Positions 50,312-55,796 of a stretch of DNA of 64,000 nt are shown piece by piece; the first letter of the stretch is position 1, and every line of letters starts with the position of its first letter. Both the position numbers and the translations under genes were made by a program. The stretch covers positions 124,001-188,000 of IMG/VR virus record IMGVR_UViG_3300042540_001399; one strand, 5' to 3'. Under the pieces are notes generated by a model that saw only the letters and a list, made by a program, of their open reading frames with translations, made no database searches and had not been told where the DNA came from.

Positions 50312-51094
50312 ATGAACCTACAGGAAAACATATTAAGAATTAAACAAATGATGGGACTTGTTACAGAAGTTACTAATCCATACAAAGTTGAATGGTTGGA
50401 ACCTACACAAGAATACTTTACACAAGAGTTAAGTGAGTTATTGGGCAATCCTATTAGGTTTACAGACAAAGAGTTTTTCAACCCTGAAAACTATGATACG
50501 GTTTATAACATTATGCCACACACATTCAAAACGATTGCTGAATTTTCTAAAGGTGAATATGTGGAAGGCGAAGATAAAATTAAGGACATACTTCTAAATC
50601 AAAATATAATATCTCTTTTAAAAGAAGAAGAAAGATGGAATGAATTGAAAAACATTTTAATGAATGACCCGCAATCAATCCAAGAAGGTTATGATTTCTT
50701 CAGTCGTGGTCAAATGACGATATGGAAAGGAACTAACCCTGAAACAGGTGAACATATTGATAATGTAAACAACACTGATTACATGGGTGAATTAACAAGT
50801 TTTCTTGAACCATTAAAAAAAACCGTATCTTCCAAAATGTCATCACATTTGAAAAAAGTTGGTGACGGAGAAGGTAATAAAGATTTACACGCTTTTGCAG
50901 GAAACATCGACCAATATAGAGAATTTGCAAAGAAAAGTGAAACAAGAAAATTACCAGCACCATTTGTTGTTAAATACTACACAAAGAAAAATGATAAAGA
51001 TTATGTTTTAATAGGTGGATTCAAAAGAAGTTCAATCGCATTACAAATGGGTATTGAACCAATAAAAGTTTGGTTAATAGATTTAACAATATGA
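50312..51094 (+). CDS. MNLQE-leader protein with C-terminal ParB/Srx-like motif
   Basis: LPAPFV...LIGGFKRSSIA. Confidence 0.55.
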   Translation: MNLQENILRIKQMMGLVTEVTNPYKVEWLEPTQEYFTQELSELLGNPIRFTDKEFFNPENYDTVYNIMPHTFKTIAEFSKGEYVEGEDKIKDILLNQNIISLLKEEERWNELKNILMNDPQSIQEGYDFFSRGQMTIWKGTNPETGEHIDNVNNTDYMGELTSFLEPLKKTVSSKMSSHLKKVGDGEGNKDLHAFAGNIDQYREFAKKSETRKLPAPFVVKYYTKKNDKDYVLIGGFKRSSIALQMGIEPIKVWLIDLTI

Positions 51095-51840
51095 ACCTAC
51101 AAGAAAACATACAAAGGATTAAACAAATGATGGGGATCATTAACGAGAATATAGATGATGTTCTTGACAAAATGAGCCGAGGTGAAGAATTGTCACAGGA
51201 AGATAAAAATAAAATGTCAGTATTTCAAAAACATCTTTTTTCAGGAAAAAAAGAAAATGATTTCAAATATCACAGAGTATCTGAGTTAAATATTGCAGAA
51301 CCTAATTCAGAAAATCATGTAAATGAATCACAAATTCTTGTACACTACGATTCTAATACTAATATCAAACCAGAATACATGGTAAAAAAAATTGCACTTA
51401 TTTTAAATAAATCAAACATTGATTGTGTAGTTGGGTATTCTTTTAGATTGTTTACATTTGCCAATGGGTATTTTGTTAAGGTAAATGAGTACCAAGTCGA
51501 AAACGCAATTTATGTTTTGAATAAAAACGGGTTTAGTACGGAAATGAATCCAATGTATGATCTTTCAAATAACTATGACACAAAAAGTAACCGAGAAGAA
51601 AAACTACAAAACTTTTCTGAAAATTCAGATATAATAATTTTGAGTGACTCTGAAATTTATCAAAATTTAAATCTTACTGATACACAATTTAATGATAGAT
51701 TAGAAAAACTGTTAAAAAAATTTGGTATAAATAACTTCTTTATAACAAAAAATAAAATAACCATTTCTGATAAATCAAAAATTGACGATGTGATTAATTA
51801 TTTGAATACCAAAGGATACAACACAAGAAGATCAAGATAA
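51091..51840 (+). CDS. MNLQE-leader hypothetical protein
   Basis: True start at 51091 (ATGA overlap with previous stop). Confidence 0.7.
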   Translation: MNLQENIQRIKQMMGIINENIDDVLDKMSRGEELSQEDKNKMSVFQKHLFSGKKENDFKYHRVSELNIAEPNSENHVNESQILVHYDSNTNIKPEYMVKKIALILNKSNIDCVVGYSFRLFTFANGYFVKVNEYQVENAIYVLNKNGFSTEMNPMYDLSNNYDTKSNREEKLQNFSENSDIIILSDSEIYQNLNLTDTQFNDRLEKLLKKFGINNFFITKNKITISDKSKIDDVINYLNTKGYNTRRSR

Positions 51841-51841
51841 T

Positions 51842-52249
51842 ATGAATTTACAAGAAAACATATCAAGGATTAAACAAATGATGGGACTTCTTACAGAAGG
51901 ACTTCATGACACATATTGGCAAAATGAAGATGGTGACAAAATAACTCTAATTGATTTATTAAATGCAACACAAGACATACCTGTAGAAGAATTTTCCGTA
52001 GAAGAATTAAAACCGCATCTATTAACTTGGGATGGGGATGAAGATGAGGTTAAAAAAATAGAAAGTGCCAATTTACAATACCCAATATTAATATTCGTAA
52101 ATGACGATGGTGAATTTATATCAATTATAGATGGTCATCACCGAGCACAAAAAGCGGTGAGAAAAGGGTTAGAAACAATTAAGGCGAAGGTAATACCAAT
52201 TAATTCTTTACCTAAAAACATAAGAAGAGTATTTTCACATATGAACTAA
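51842..52249 (+). CDS. MNLQE-leader ParB/Sulfiredoxin-like protein
   Basis: ANLQYPILI...IIDGHHRAQKA. Confidence 0.8.
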   Translation: MNLQENISRIKQMMGLLTEGLHDTYWQNEDGDKITLIDLLNATQDIPVEEFSVEELKPHLLTWDGDEDEVKKIESANLQYPILIFVNDDGEFISIIDGHHRAQKAVRKGLETIKAKVIPINSLPKNIRRVFSHMN

Positions 52250-52250
52250 T

Positions 52251-53531
52251 ATGAACCTACAAGAATCCATAAGAAGAATATTAAGGGAAGATTTGTTAAA
52301 TAAATCAAAATTCTTTCTAAGAAGAATTAATTTAGATGAGGTTAAAAAATTACTTCCAATCAACGCAGAACAAGTACATGGTGAAACAAAAAGTTATGAG
52401 CAATTCAAGTATGAATTAACTTTAAGAGCCGTGGAGGCAATTATGTGGAATGATTATGAACTCGGGTGGGAAGATCTACCAGAACAAGAGGAAATAGAAT
52501 TTGTTAATGAAGTTTCCAACATGTTTAATAAAACAATCAAAAAGTTATATAATTCTTATAGTGGAAGAATATTAAGGGAAGAAGATTATTCTCCGGCGGG
52601 TAAAGAAATAATACCAAATAAAATTGTGATCCACAAGTCCAATCCGATCTTCAGAAATAAGATAATGGAAAATGGTCTTAAAGTAAGGGCAGGAGAATGT
52701 TACAAAATATATGTTGGTTATGGTGTTAAGTGTAAACCTGCAATTTTTGCAACCAACTCAACGAACAAAAGAGCATGGTTTGATTCAACATACGACGATG
52801 ATATATGGGAAATAAATACAGAAATGATTCCTGATGTAAAGTGGTATAAAGATAGACACTTTGAGTCAAGGTCAAAACATATTGTTACGTTTCAAGACAT
52901 ACCAAAAGAAGCAATAACTTTAAAATATGAAGGAAGTGGAAGTGGAGATGTAGAAAAGTGGGATAAAGATTCGCCAAACATAGTTAGAGAATCCCAAATA
53001 GACCCTTATCTTCTAAGAAGATTTCATGAGTTCGACGACACTTTCAAATTGGTATCATCAAATGTTTATCCATGTGATTTCAGACATCCACAACATTATT
53101 GGAATTACACGATAGAAAGAGTACTGGAAGCTATTTATTTTAATTTTTTCTATGAAACTAAATCCGAATTAAATTGGGAGTCCCTTTCTGATGAAATTCT
53201 TTATCTTCTAAATAGAACATATTATGATGAATTAGTTTCAGACTGGGAATCCAAGTGTAATAATAATATTCATGAAGATTTTTCACCTGAGTTTTTAAGA
53301 AGAATAACTATAATTGATACGTTAATTGACGCAACCCTTTCTTCTATGTACCCATGTGAATATAGTTCTGAAAAAGCTTTTCTTCGTGGTTTATACGACG
53401 AATTATATTGGTCATTTATAGGGGAAGACTTAAAAATTATTGACTATTCAGATATTATTGATTTTATAGAAGAAAACAGAAAAGAAGACATATATGATTA
53501 TTGGGACGAATATTGTGTTCGATTATCATAA
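52251..53531 (+). CDS. Four-module protein: LRR module, ADP-ribosyltransferase-like domain, two more LRR modules
   Basis: VIHKS...IMENGL...IFAT...DIPKEAI; modules separated by ILREE, VRE and IHE. Confidence 0.6.
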   Translation: MNLQESIRRILREDLLNKSKFFLRRINLDEVKKLLPINAEQVHGETKSYEQFKYELTLRAVEAIMWNDYELGWEDLPEQEEIEFVNEVSNMFNKTIKKLYNSYSGRILREEDYSPAGKEIIPNKIVIHKSNPIFRNKIMENGLKVRAGECYKIYVGYGVKCKPAIFATNSTNKRAWFDSTYDDDIWEINTEMIPDVKWYKDRHFESRSKHIVTFQDIPKEAITLKYEGSGSGDVEKWDKDSPNIVRESQIDPYLLRRFHEFDDTFKLVSSNVYPCDFRHPQHYWNYTIERVLEAIYFNFFYETKSELNWESLSDEILYLLNRTYYDELVSDWESKCNNNIHEDFSPEFLRRITIIDTLIDATLSSMYPCEYSSEKAFLRGLYDELYWSFIGEDLKIIDYSDIIDFIEENRKEDIYDYWDEYCVRLS

Positions 53532-53532
53532 T

Positions 53533-53610
53533 TAACTATGGTTTTCAATTACTCGGTTCATAGTCCTTCACTTCGTTCGGAATTCACCTCATAATTTAAT
53601 ACCATAGTTA
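53533..53610 (-). other. Hairpin with three tandem G.A pairs and a C-GAA-G triloop
   Basis: Minus strand: TAACTATGGT...GA-GGT-GA-AT-TCC-GA-AC-GAA-GT-GA-A-GGA-CT-AT-GA-ACC-GA...ACCATAGTTA. Confidence 0.7.
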
Positions 53611-53650
53611 TATTTATTATACATAAAGGATAACAAATCAAAAGACAACA

Positions 53651-53974
53651 ATGTCACTTAAAAAAATAATTAGAAAAGTATTGATTCAAGAATCGGGAAA
53701 CATAGATCCTTACATACTTCGAAGACTTGATTTAGATAAGTTCAATGATCTCTTAGATAAAGGAAAAGTATATATGTTTTATGAATCCAATTCATTAGAA
53801 GAATTCAAATGGAAGTTAGTTACGGCAACATTAGAAAACTATCATTACTACAAGTATGAAACTGATATAGATACAAGTGATGGATATTTCGATCAAACAA
53901 TACAAAGTCTTATCAACTTATTTGAGCCCAAGTTAGAAACTATTTATAACAGATTAAAAAATGAAAGAGGATGA
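53651..53974 (+). CDS. Leader plus LRR-motif module
   Basis: KKIIRKVLIQE; IDPYILRRLD. Confidence 0.65.
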   Translation: MSLKKIIRKVLIQESGNIDPYILRRLDLDKFNDLLDKGKVYMFYESNSLEEFKWKLVTATLENYHYYKYETDIDTSDGYFDQTIQSLINLFEPKLETIYNRLKNERG

Positions 53975-54594
53975 ACAAACAATTAAATCCATTTTTGTTA
54001 CGTAGAGTTGATCCTAAAGTGTTAGACGCCGAATTTGAGGATTGTTTAGATACTGCCACAAACATGTACAACAGGGGAAAAGACAAAAGTTCGGTATCAT
54101 TACCTCAGTTTAGAAATAGAGTCATATCCATGTTGATAGACTCAATTCACTATGATATACATAGCTCTGTTCCAGAAGAACTTCAGTGGTATGATGATGT
54201 CTTTTATATGTTAAAAGATTATTATGGGGGTAAGATTAAAAAAAGATTAGATCAATTAAATTCCAAAACTATAAATGAATCCAAGTTACAAATTTATATG
54301 TTAAGAAGAATAGATGTTGTTGAACATTACCTTAACAATTTAAGTTCAAAAGATGTTTGTATACACTGGTCAGACGATGAGGCTTTAGAATATTCTAGTC
54401 AAATACTTTCAGACATGTCAAGAATTATTATTGATGAACTACACTATGTTGATTCAGAATCATATGTAGACAAGTATGATGAAATATATCAATTTTTAAT
54501 TGATCTTGATTATCCGAAAAGAATAGTAGACTTCTTTTATGATTCATTAAAAACTTGTGAAGATAGACATAGATATAAATTTAGAAAACCATAA
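53971..54594 (+). CDS. Two LRR-motif modules
   Basis: NPFLLRRVD and INE-SKLQIYMLRRID. Confidence 0.65.
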   Translation: MNKQLNPFLLRRVDPKVLDAEFEDCLDTATNMYNRGKDKSSVSLPQFRNRVISMLIDSIHYDIHSSVPEELQWYDDVFYMLKDYYGGKIKKRLDQLNSKTINESKLQIYMLRRIDVVEHYLNNLSSKDVCIHWSDDEALEYSSQILSDMSRIIIDELHYVDSESYVDKYDEIYQFLIDLDYPKRIVDFFYDSLKTCEDRHRYKFRKP

Positions 54595-54676
54595 AATAAT
54601 ATAACACATTCACTCATTACAAAGGGGACCTCAATCGGTTCCCTTTTTCATTCACTCATATGTTATACTATTTTAT
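54591..54676 (-). other. Second tandem G.A hairpin
   Basis: 19-bp outer stem (two G.T); ATGAGTGAAT paired with ATGAGTGAAT; inner AAAGGG/CCCTTT and ACC/GGT. Confidence 0.7.
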
Positions 54677-55796
54677 AAAACTATAATCCCCCCATTTAGT
54701 TAAGTCCTAATATATTGTCCCCCCATTTAAGTTGACCAATGATTACACATTTTGCGTAACACATTTTGTATAATGTTATGGTACAACTATCAAGACAACT
54801 TTGTACCAAAGTTATATTTTAGTGTTGTACTTGTATTATATTTTGGTGTGGTGATTAGTTACTAAATGAATGTGTATATGAAAAGGGTATAAACATACCC
54901 ACTTATTACCACTTATTAGAAGTTATTACCACTTTACTATGTGTTATTAGTTGTGTAGATTTTAGTGGTCAGGATGTTGAAAAACCCACTAAAGTGGTCG
55001 TTGAAGTTATCTATTTAATGATCTATAAGTGATCTACTAACGACATAAATGTCTGTCCACGGCAACAGTACCATTAATATATGTTTTTCGCTGGAGAATA
55101 GACATAGTGAAAAAAGTGGTTCTGTAGGGGTCAAGAAGGGGGATTTTTTAGGTCTGTAGATAGCAACAGGTACAATTTCGGTGGTAGAAAGTGGGAAGTA
55201 TAGAGTGGGGAAAAGTGGTAGAAAACCCGTAAAGAGATTGTGTCGTGTGTAACGCTCGACTGACATTTTGACAAAAACAAGTTTTTTAACATAATTATTT
55301 ATTAACAATTCCCCCTGGTGATGGAGATATTAAAAGTTTTCAACAAAGTAATTGACAAAAGTGGTGATACCATAACCCTGACATATTGTCACCAAAACTA
55401 TTCTGGTACATGTGTGTATAAAGAACATAACTTGGTTGGTAAAAATAAACCTATCAGACAAAGGTTCTACACCCTTGAGTCATCAGACATGGGGGATGTA
55501 TTAGAATATCTATTTACACAGGGACATATTAAAGATGGGGACTTCAATACCATTGGTCCCCAACTACAAGACTATTCATTAGGTCTTATATATGATCATC
55601 CATTTGATCAATAATATAACGACGAATAAAGTTAGTTATATTTGACGTGGGGAAGTAGTCCAAAAAGAAAGCACACACTGTAAGACCAAACAGAAATAAC
55701 AACGTGATTACAACATAGACCATAAGAAACATTTCCATAACAGAATAATAACACACACCATTCACCTTTTCAAGATCATTAGTATATTTATTATTA

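What the first reader, a model, noticed from the sequence alone, without database searches (positions are those of the whole stretch)
53533..53610. Hidden minus-strand hairpin built from three tandem G.A pairs with a C-GAA-G triloop
Seen: the + strand looks like an inverted repeat with an unpaired middle. The minus strand folds fully if tandem GA/GA pairs are allowed: 10-bp perfect stem, AT-rich stem, GA.GA, GGT/ACC, GA.GA, AT/AT, TCC/GGA, GA.GA, AC/GT, GAA loop. Established: sheared tandem G.A pairs and GNA triloops are very stable in single-stranded DNA. Inference: because this is the non-mRNA strand, it is probably a functional ssDNA structure, such as a priming or nicking signal, hairpin promoter or REP-like element. 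Standard folding tools would miss it.
Basis: partly seen in the sequence, partly recalled or inferred. Interest (0 to 1): 0.75.

Follow-up and report, generated by a model that had tools for sequence, protein, structure and literature searches.

The report
Strand-specific hairpin at phage cassette boundaries
The hairpin is real and is one copy of an apparently undescribed family of about 90-base elements in uncultured lake jumbo phages, which sit just after genes, fold best on the strand opposite the mRNA, and mark the points where small gene cassettes are gained or lost.

Summary
The hairpin at 53533-53610 exists as described. ViennaRNA does find its skeleton.

It lies in a 119-nt gap of a 290,887-bp lake phage, 2 nt after a stop codon and abutting a promoter-like ATATTTAT motif.

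It is single-copy in its own genome by sequence. A gapped word search and a covariance model found 19 related elements in 12 phage records. One is a distant sibling 1.06 kb downstream in this window (54592-54675).

Across 15 aligned members, 91% of stem cells pair and 11 of 29 pairs show compensatory changes. All 19 members fold more stably on the strand antisense to the upstream gene. The first two tandem G.A steps are invariant or nearly so. The apex varies, but C-GNA-G occurs on that strand in 17 of 19.

The elements bracket cassettes of 1-3 mostly orphan ORFs. Flank homology breaks at them. One record has a single hybrid element where a relative has element-cassette-element.

Best reading: a strand-specific DNA hairpin marking cassette junctions, working like attC or PeSL but a member of neither. 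ssDNA versus antisense RNA, and the partner protein, remain untested.

The parts
52251..53531 (+). Upstream ORF (426 aa, no Pfam or PHROG match). It is a mosaic of three modules that occur as separate genes in relatives. Stop TAA at 53529-53531, 2 nt before the hairpin.
53533..53610 (-). Hairpin element H1 (covariance-model match 53529-53614, 84.1 bits). This is the family member the finding describes. The folding strand is the minus strand.
53533..53552 (-). 3' arm of the outer stem (minus-strand sense). It pairs with 53591-53610. The outer 10 bp are perfect, followed by an AT-rich stretch with two single mismatches and a T.G wobble. The sequence differs from other family members but stays complementary, through five compensatory pair changes.
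53591..53610 (-). 5' arm of the outer stem (minus-strand sense).
53553..53590 (-). Conserved interior. Tandem G.A step 1 is 53589-53590 with 53553-53554. GGT/ACC is 53586-53588 with 53555-53557. Tandem G.A step 2 is 53584-53585 with 53558-53559. AT/AT is 53582-53583 with 53560-53561. The CT bulge is 53562-53563. TCC/GGA is 53579-53581 with 53564-53566.
   Evidence: step 1: GA on both arms in 15/15; step 2: 15/15 and 14/15
53567..53578 (-). Variable apex of this copy. It holds the A bulge (53567), a third G.A step (53577-53578 with 53568-53569), AC/GT, and the GAA triloop (53572-53574) closed by C-G. A population variant inserts A after 53572, giving a C-GATA-G cap.
53610..53617 (+). Promoter-like motif ATATTTAT, abutting the hairpin and 41 nt before the next ATG. 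The motif is found in 56 of 339 upstream regions (7.8 expected).
53651..54594 (+). Two overlapping orphan ORFs (107 and 207 aa). They form the cassette bracketed by H1 and H2.
54592..54675 (-). H2, a distant family member (model match 54590-54677 on the minus strand only, 31.8 bits, E 6e-5 in 112 kb). It has an 18-nt outer stem. On the minus strand a direct repeat of ATGAGTGAAT pairs with itself as AT / GA.AG / GT.TG / GA.AG / AT. Its apex is a classical plus-strand terminator hairpin with a T run. It begins with the stop codon of the 207-aa ORF.

Best explanation
H1 is one copy of a repeated intergenic element, about 85-96 nt long, carried by uncultured freshwater large phages.

Shown:
- The element sits directly after the stop codon of a gene in nearly all copies examined, in a fixed orientation.
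- It recurs 0.7-2 kb apart and so brackets cassettes of one to three mostly orphan ORFs.
- Its stem is kept by compensatory changes.
- The strand that folds well is always the one antisense to the upstream gene, which is the template strand.
- That fold is an outer Watson-Crick stem, then two conserved tandem G.A steps alternating with 2-3-bp helices and a conserved CT bulge, then a variable apex often capped by C-GNA-G.
- Homology between related phages breaks at the element, and cassette presence or absence is resolved through a single hybrid element.

Inferred:
- The functional form is a DNA hairpin of the template strand, extruded under negative supercoiling or exposed as single-stranded DNA.
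- A still unidentified protein recognises its asymmetric shape.
- The element acts as the junction at which cassettes are exchanged, and probably as a boundary between transcription units.

In working principle it resembles an integron attC site or a T4-type PeSL.
For: Family:
- A 72-nt homologue turned up in a related record.
- Word and gap-pattern scans found 11 viral loci.
- Covariance model R1 then found more divergent copies, and H2.

Fold:
- With 12 sequences, 92.0% of cells pair and 8 pairs show double changes (0 of 500 shuffles); slid controls give 35-48%.
- With 15 sequences, 91.0% pair and 11 of 29 pairs show double changes, 20 cells in all.
- One member has lost one base on each arm of the GGT/ACC helix.

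Strand:
- G.U occurs at 6 pair positions on the minus sense against 1 on the plus sense.
- RNAalifold gives -19.52 against -8.03 kcal/mol.
- Minus is more stable in 19 of 19 members. The mean difference is -11.1 kcal/mol with RNA parameters and -4.2 with DNA parameters.
- The model scores 84-102 bits on the minus sense against 24-35 on the other strand.
- CGNAG occurs in 17 of 19 members on the minus sense and in none on the plus sense.

Context:
- In 10 of the first 12 copies a co-oriented ORF ends 12-113 nt before the conserved box.
- Arrays of 2-4 copies occur.

Junction:
- Pairs of copies share the left or the right flank but not both. Scores are 98-208 against a null of 16.
- Record G007 aligns with G011 up to the end of element a, and again from the start of element b. 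G007 therefore has one element where G011 has a 1.15-kb cassette between two.
- The G007 element combines the left arm of a with the apex and right arm of b.
Against: - No recombinase was found. The genome has no Phage_integrase, Y1 transposase, RecT or ERF domain, and only a sub-threshold RecA-like hit.
- Complete genomes hold few copies: one canonical plus H2 here, and one in the 291,867-bp relative.
- The conserved core of about 60 nt would by itself allow ordinary homologous exchange, so the fold need not be what drives recombination.
- No experiment or read data show single-stranded DNA or extrusion.
- One metatranscriptome contig (53563-53713, no direction, depth 2) crosses half the hairpin and cannot exclude an RNA role.
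- Positive GC skew suggests the folding strand is the leading-strand template, which is rarely single-stranded.
- The sequences are related by descent, so counts such as 19 of 19 are not independent trials.
- The first 12 copies were found with a pattern that forces part of the interior.
Confidence: 0.45

Rival explanations
1. A PeSL-like regulatory boundary. The element would be a conserved end-of-operon signal (terminator, insulator or RNA-processing hairpin) followed by the next promoter. Cassette shuffling would be a passive by-product of homologous recombination between conserved copies, with no structure-specific DNA step.
For: - The element lies between a stop codon and the next promoter-like motif.
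- H2 and the G004 member carry GC-rich apex hairpins, and H2's is followed by a T run.
- The crossover in the G007 hybrid lies inside a 22-nt identical core.
- PeSLs behave this way in T4-type phages (PMC4122927, PMC2839356).
Against: - The sense-strand fold is weak. The consensus is -8.0 kcal/mol, with C.A mismatches where the other strand has G.U.
- Most copies have no T run after the stem.
- The genome has ordinary GC-rich terminators elsewhere.
- This reading does not explain the invariant G.A steps or the consistent strand bias.
Confidence: 0.25
2. A template-strand initiation signal. The hairpin would be recognised on unwound DNA by an RNA polymerase or a primase, as with phage N4 virion RNA polymerase promoters or ssiA/G4-type priming sites. 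These known sites also use C-GNA-G mini-hairpins.
For: - The folding strand is the template strand of the downstream genes.
- C-GNA-G or C-GNNA-G caps occur with all four N, including the population variant GATA.
- The elements precede small orphan ORFs that look like early genes.
- Mini-hairpins occur at N4 promoters, ssiA and the G4 origin (PMC13037366).
Against: - No T7-like RNA polymerase domain was found, though that control was silent. No beta-prime domain and no DnaG zinc ribbon were found.
- Three of the four largest ORFs gave no family match, and the fourth is a collagen-like tail fibre.
- The element is far larger than the 5-bp-stem, 3-nt-loop N4 promoter.
- The majority apex type is a 5-bp helix with a 7-nt loop.
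- The distance to the next ORF varies from 7 to 110 nt.
Confidence: 0.15
3. A small antisense RNA gene or antisense RNA motif. The minus-strand fold would be an RNA structure, since tandem G.A and G.U are common in RNA.
For: - The preference for the minus sense is strongest with RNA parameters.
- G.U pairs are conserved.
- One copy (G011_b) lies 33 nt upstream of a possible minus-strand ORF.
Against: - The downstream flanks, which would hold the promoter, are unrelated between copies.
- The minus-strand T run after the stem is inconsistent between copies.
- Neighbouring genes are nearly all on the plus strand.
- No Rfam family matches.
Confidence: 0.08
4. A miniature inverted-repeat transposable element (MITE) or another self-mobile repeat that inserted after genes.
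For: - It has terminal inverted repeats and a conserved core.
- There are several copies per record, with unrelated flanks.
Against: - There are no target-site duplications.
- No transposase families were detected.
- Its position, right at stop codons and in a fixed orientation, is not what random insertion gives.
- The arms diverge while staying paired.
Confidence: 0.04

Closest known systems
Integron attC sites (gene-cassette recombination sites)
   Same: - An imperfect inverted repeat of similar length (attC 57-141 bp), directly after a cassette ORF and in a fixed orientation.
- The bottom strand, not the coding strand, is the one that folds.
- It has conserved inner boxes, bulged bases on one arm, symmetric unpaired steps, a variable terminal structure and purine skew.
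- Flanks are mosaic and cassettes are gained or lost at the site (PMC5027507).
   Different: - There is no family-wide AAC/GTT core at the stem base. Only H1 has it, apparently by chance.
- The unpaired steps are 2x2 G.A rather than a 5-6-nt central spacer.
- No tyrosine recombinase is present in the phage.
- The observed crossover lies between the left arm and the apex, not at the stem base.
- The next gene has its own promoter-like motif.
PeSLs (promoter-early stem-loops) of T4-type phages
   Same: - Conserved composite intergenic motifs in hyperplastic regions, next to orphan ORFs.
- They lie at indel and replacement boundaries between close relatives.
- They are proposed to mediate modular shuffling (PMC2839356, PMC4122927).
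- H1 is followed at once by a promoter-like motif.
   Different: - PeSL stem-loops are short GC-rich sense-strand terminators next to sigma-70-like promoters.
- Here the hairpin is about 90 nt, conserved in sequence, and selected on the antisense strand with G.A steps.
- The promoter is not part of the conserved unit.
C-GNA-G 'mini-hairpin' signals on single-stranded DNA (N4 virion RNA polymerase promoters, ssiA of RSF1010, G4 origin)
   Same: - A C-G-closed GNA or GNNA cap on the non-coding strand.
- N varies freely, as expected for this loop (PMC13037366, PMC3201870).
   Different: - The known signals are small (a 5-bp stem for N4) and need a dedicated polymerase or primase that was not detected here.
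- The cap is absent from the majority apex type and from H2.
Purine-rich fold-back repeats of the GGAAT/ATGGA type (human satellite III)
   Same: The arms are direct purine motifs (ATGAGGTGAAT, GGAATGG...). They pair with themselves through sheared G.A flanked by A-T (PMC11014236).
   Different: The similarity is in DNA chemistry only. These are not tandem satellites, and they occur in phage intergenic DNA with a Watson-Crick clamp.
Bacterial REP/BIME and Correia-type intergenic hairpin repeats
   Same: Repeated intergenic hairpins placed after genes.
   Different: - No RAYT/Y1 transposase is present and there is no target duplication.
- Copy number is low.
- The strand-specific non-Watson-Crick design is not a described feature of those repeats (from my own knowledge).

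Membership tests
Integron attC | [quoted passage not shown] | tested here: met
Integron attC | A conserved R box with an AAC triplet (RYYYAAC / GTTRRRY) at the base of the stem | tested here: not met
   The family stem base is AAGAG...CTCTT. Only H1 has TAAC...GTTA.
Integron attC | Extrahelical bases on one arm, an unpaired central spacer of 5-6 nt, and a variable terminal structure | tested here: inconclusive
   There is a conserved CT bulge (14 of 15) and a variable apex. The unpaired steps, however, are 2x2 G.A.
Integron attC | An IntI-type tyrosine recombinase in the same replicon | tested here: not met
   PF00589 is absent from the 99%-complete genome, and the control rang in 14 of 14 genomes.
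PeSL (T4-type promoter-terminator cassette) | Located in hyperplastic regions at indel boundaries next to orphan ORFs | tested here: met
PeSL (T4-type promoter-terminator cassette) | A short GC-rich sense-strand stem-loop with a T run, joined to a conserved early promoter | tested here: not met
   Most copies have no T run. The sense fold is weak. The downstream flank is not conserved.
Intrinsic (rho-independent) terminator | A stable GC-rich RNA hairpin on the sense strand, immediately followed by a U tract | tested here: not met
   The scan lists none at H1. The interior adds nothing on the plus strand (z -0.8). H2's apex does meet this feature.
N4-type hairpin promoter | A template-strand hairpin with a 5-7-bp stem and a 3-nt purine-centred loop | tested here: inconclusive
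   A C-GNA-G cap is present in H1 and about half the family, but embedded in a 90-nt hairpin.
N4-type hairpin promoter | A virion-packaged single-subunit RNA polymerase | tested here: inconclusive
   PF00940 was not found, but the control rang nowhere. Three of the four largest ORFs gave no family match.
MITE / transposable repeat | Terminal inverted repeats flanked by a target-site duplication | tested here: not met
   No duplicated flanks in 19 copies.
REP / IS200-IS605-type hairpin ends | An associated Y1 (HUH) transposase | tested here: not met
   PF01797 is absent.
Known RNA families (Rfam 15) | A match at the gathering score | tested here: not met
   No match in the window. Only chance-level matches at E > 0.04 around the site.

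The most novel reading that the evidence does not exclude
These elements may be the recombination sites of an integron-like, structure-specific cassette exchange system native to large phages. The template-strand hairpin, shaped by tandem sheared G.A pairs and a bulge, would be recognised as single-stranded or extruded DNA by a recombinase of a family not yet recognised. That would let phages capture and discard orphan genes at defined junctions.
Probability: 0.2. Interest if true: 0.9.

Novelty: new variant of a known kind. Interest (0 to 1): 0.72.

Why it matters
How large phages turn over their many orphan genes is an open question. Conserved intergenic linkers (PeSLs) are one proposed route, and integrons are the bacterial model.

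This is a conserved junction element whose evolutionary signal points to a fold of the non-coding DNA strand built partly from non-Watson-Crick G.A pairs. That signal comprises compensatory changes, G.T wobbles, invariant G.A steps and C-GNA-G caps.

If the DNA fold is functional, it would be a rare natural case of selection for sheared G.A architecture in double-stranded phage DNA. It would also give a handle for finding the protein that reads it.

Even on the conservative reading, the family gives a marker for cassette boundaries in uncultured lake phages. It also provides a ready set of natural variants for biophysical tests.

Tried and rejected
- tRNA, tmRNA and Rfam searches found nothing.
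- Megablast of the locus and blastn of a family member against 50,697 cultured phage records found no match.
- BLAST and nhmmer of H1 against its own genome found a single copy.
- Relatives fetched through the upstream protein (8 viral and 51 metagenome loci) held only identical copies of H1, so they gave no covariation.
- An exact 34-mer spanning the apex found only identical copies, because the apex is variable.
- The left-core 17-mer gave four unrelated GC-rich coding hits.
- The genome-contig scan returned only Lachnospiraceae coding sequences with no flank similarity. I rejected these as chance.
- The strand asymmetry of H1 alone is not an outlier genome-wide: 7% of windows are as asymmetric. 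It became meaningful only at family level.
- My first, lenient GA-aware genome scan was uninformative, because shuffled genomes scored as high. I replaced it with stricter scoring.
- MAFFT global alignment of H1 with H2 failed. A local alignment gave p of about 0.01, same strand only.
- Read laying gave no usable direction or transcript ends.
- I considered an attC reading and rejected membership (no AAC/GTT, no integrase).
- I considered a MITE and rejected it (no target duplication).
- I considered a decayed tRNA and rejected it.

Full report
**Setting.** The window is bases 124001-188000 of a 290,887-bp IMG/VR virus record, estimated 99% complete and 31% G+C, with most genes on the plus strand. 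Public runs that hold it are lake-water metagenomes. The finding lies in a 119-nt gap. On its left is a 426-aa ORF with a stop at 53529-53531. On its right is a 107-aa ORF starting at 53651. Neither ORF has a Pfam or PHROG match.

**Checking the observation.**
- The inverted repeat is real. It has 19-nt arms, 17 of 19 complementary, 40 nt apart, and the outer 10 bp are perfect.
- All six GA steps are in the pyrimidine-GA-purine context. From my own knowledge of the DNA literature, that context favours sheared pairs.
- ViennaRNA recovers the same helices on both strands, so standard tools do not miss it. With DNA parameters it gives -10.1 (minus) against -7.8 (plus) kcal/mol. With RNA parameters it gives -22.7 against -16.6, and z ranges from -3.4 to -5.5.

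**Is the interior more than chance?**
- With standard parameters it adds little beyond the outer arms: z = -2.05 for RNA minus and -0.55 for DNA minus.
- H1's strand asymmetry alone is unremarkable genome-wide.
- With a scoring that I chose after seeing the data and that counts tandem GA as paired, the interior scores 28 against 7.3 +/- 4.0 (0 of 3000 dinucleotide shuffles). Without GA credit it is at chance.
- A strict genome-wide scan puts this hairpin (44.5) and a second one 1.06 kb downstream (56) as the two best GA-containing hairpins on the minus strand. The next scores 32.5, and shuffled strands peak at 30-47.

**The sibling, H2.** H2 (54592-54675) starts with the stop codon of the second downstream ORF.
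- It has an 18-nt outer stem.
- It has a direct repeat of CATTCACTCAT on the plus strand (54607-54617 and 54649-54659).
- Its apex is a classical terminator with a T run.
- On the minus strand the repeat pairs with itself as AT / GA.AG / GT.TG / GA.AG / AT.
- H1 and H2 share words in the same order and on the same strand (local alignment p about 0.01; the reverse strand is at chance).

**Finding relatives.** Loci fetched through the flanking proteins held only identical copies. Searching whole related records with the DNA then gave a 72-nt match at 81% identity in a 106-kb record.
- In that copy the interior is identical to H1 apart from a 9-nt insertion at the apex.
- Its outer stem has a different sequence but is a perfect 12-bp stem.
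- Word and gap-pattern scans of the viral collection then gave 11 loci.
- Hits of the 17-mer alone, and of the pattern in bacterial genomes, were unrelated coding sequences.
- I aligned 12 copies in both senses (A3, A4) and built covariance model R1.
- Searching the records behind the loci found six more divergent members. In a 112-kb search it also found H2, on the minus strand only (31.8 bits, E 6e-5).
- Several fragments carry arrays of copies: four in G010 and two each in G008, G011 and G012, spaced 0.7-2 kb apart. The two complete 291-kb genomes have one canonical copy each.
- No cultured phage record matches.

**Structure and strand.**
- On the minus-sense alignment, 92.0% of cells are standard pairs and 8 pairs show changes on both sides. 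No shuffle of 500 reaches this, and slid controls give 35-48%.
- With 15 sequences aligned to the model, 91.0% of cells pair and 11 of 29 pairs show double changes, 20 cells in all. That alignment leans towards the model.
- One member has lost one base on each arm of the GGT/ACC helix.
- The same structure on the plus sense pairs in 86.8% of cells. The difference is that six pair positions carry G.U on the minus sense, and those are C.A mismatches on the plus sense. The reverse holds at one position only.
- RNAalifold gives -19.52 against -8.03 kcal/mol.
- Folded one by one, all 19 members are more stable in the minus sense. The mean difference is -11.1 kcal/mol with RNA parameters and -4.2 with DNA parameters. 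Seventeen of the 19 show two tandem GA loops in that fold.
- In the 15-sequence alignment the first GA step is GA on both arms in 15 of 15. The second is GA in 15 and 14 of 15. The CT bulge is kept in 14 of 15.
- Part of this invariance is forced for the first 12 copies by my search pattern. The first GA step and the model-found members are not forced.

**The apex.** It is variable.
- The third GA step and the C-GAA-G triloop belong to H1's subtype.
- The commonest type has a 5-bp helix with a 7-nt loop.
- Even so, CGNAG occurs on the minus sense in 17 of 19 members and never on the plus sense, and N takes all four bases.
- A population variant of H1 inserts A after 53572, which gives C-GATA-G.
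- C-G-closed GNA and GNNA caps are known to be unusually stable in DNA (PMC13037366, PMC3201870).

**Context.**
- In 10 of the first 12 copies a co-oriented ORF ends 12-113 nt before the conserved box. That places the stop at or within a few bases of the outer stem.
- In the arrays the elements separate groups of one to three small ORFs. Of ten ORFs tested, one is a DNA methyltransferase and nine have no family.
- H1 abuts ATATTTAT, a motif found in 56 of 339 upstream regions against 7.8 expected, usually 12-26 nt before the ATG.
- The flanks downstream of other copies are not conserved, and most copies lack a T run on either strand.

**Junctions.**
- Pairwise comparison of 250-nt flanks shows copies that share the left flank and the element but not the right flank, or the reverse. 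Scores are 98-208 against a null mean of 16 and maximum of 29.
- Record G007 aligns with G011 from far upstream to the end of element a (88% identity). It aligns again from the start of element b onward (74%). G007 therefore has a single element where G011 has two elements around a 1.15-kb cassette.
- The G007 element has the left arm of a and the apex and right arm of b, so the crossover lies in the shared 22-nt left core.
- There are no target-site duplications.

**What the genome lacks.**
- No tyrosine recombinase, Y1 transposase, RecT, ERF, DnaG zinc ribbon or RNA polymerase beta-prime domain was found.
- There is one RecA-like hit below the family cut-off.
- The search for a T7-like polymerase was uninformative, because its control rang nowhere.
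- The largest ORF is a collagen-like tail fibre, and the next three have no matches.

**Transcription evidence.** Only weak data exist. One 151-nt metatranscriptome contig covers 53563-53713, at depth 2 and with no direction. Assemblies of other runs break inside the hairpin.

**Interpretation.**
- Shown: the family, the selected stem, the strand preference, the position after genes, and the role as a homology breakpoint and cassette junction.
- Inferred: the folded form is DNA. No conserved promoter exists for an antisense RNA and the neighbours are nearly all plus-strand genes.
- Also inferred: the asymmetric shape is read by a protein.
- The working principle is closest to integron attC sites (PMC5027507) and to PeSLs (PMC4122927, PMC2839356). 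Membership in either fails on defining features.
- The main rival is a PeSL-like regulatory boundary with passive homologous exchange. An N4-like or ssi-like initiation signal comes second.

**Verdict.** The specific functions it proposed are untested. The finding is a new variant of the 'cassette-junction hairpin' kind. I give it an interest of 0.72.

Noticed in passing
window 54680-55310: A non-coding stretch of about 630 nt lies right after H2 and is dense in short direct and inverted repeats. Examples are TTATTACCACTT twice (54903, 54923), AAAAGTGGT (55112, 55211), GTGGTAGAAA (55181, 55215) and a CCCCCCATTTA pair (54682, 54713). It looks iteron-like, so possibly an origin or regulatory region. 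A metatranscriptome contig covers 55023-55173.
   Followed up: partly
whole genome; in the window e.g. 53610-53617: The promoter-like motif ATATTTAT is enriched about 7-fold upstream of genes, mostly 12-26 nt before the ATG. Leaders are A-rich and lack a Shine-Dalgarno sequence, which hints at a Bacteroidota-type host. Several copies sit about 10 nt after classical terminators.
   Followed up: partly
window 51070-54594 and related loci: Genes here form paralogue families that share a conserved N-terminus of about 20-30 aa. The first 100 residues of the 426-aa ORF resemble the 107-aa ORF. The 426-aa ORF is a mosaic of three modules found as separate genes in relatives. The same 40-50-nt gene-start repeats recur in G007 and G011 and could be a second kind of recombination linker.
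   Followed up: partly
window 51842-52249: The 135-aa ORF two genes upstream of H1 matches phrog_17560 (E 2.5e-13) and, weakly, ParB-like partition protein families (E about 0.004).
   Followed up: no
window 53572 (population variant in run X17): One contig inserts A after 53572, which turns the C-GAA-G triloop into a C-GATA-G tetraloop. Assemblies of other runs break inside the hairpin.
   Followed up: partly
window 51834-52250 (runs X20, X25, X26): Contigs in three runs skip 415 nt, which is the whole 135-aa ORF, and have 8 other letters at the joint. This is another cassette-like presence/absence polymorphism close to the finding.
   Followed up: no
own genome outside the window, about 222,000-228,000: Several intergenic stretches with higher G+C and strong folds look like non-coding RNA genes. 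They were seen in the hairpin lists but not examined.
   Followed up: no
own genome 53280-53498 (outside the window): A 340-aa ORF gives a RecA-family match below the cut-off (18.6 bits). It may be a RecA-fold recombinase or ATPase.
   Followed up: no
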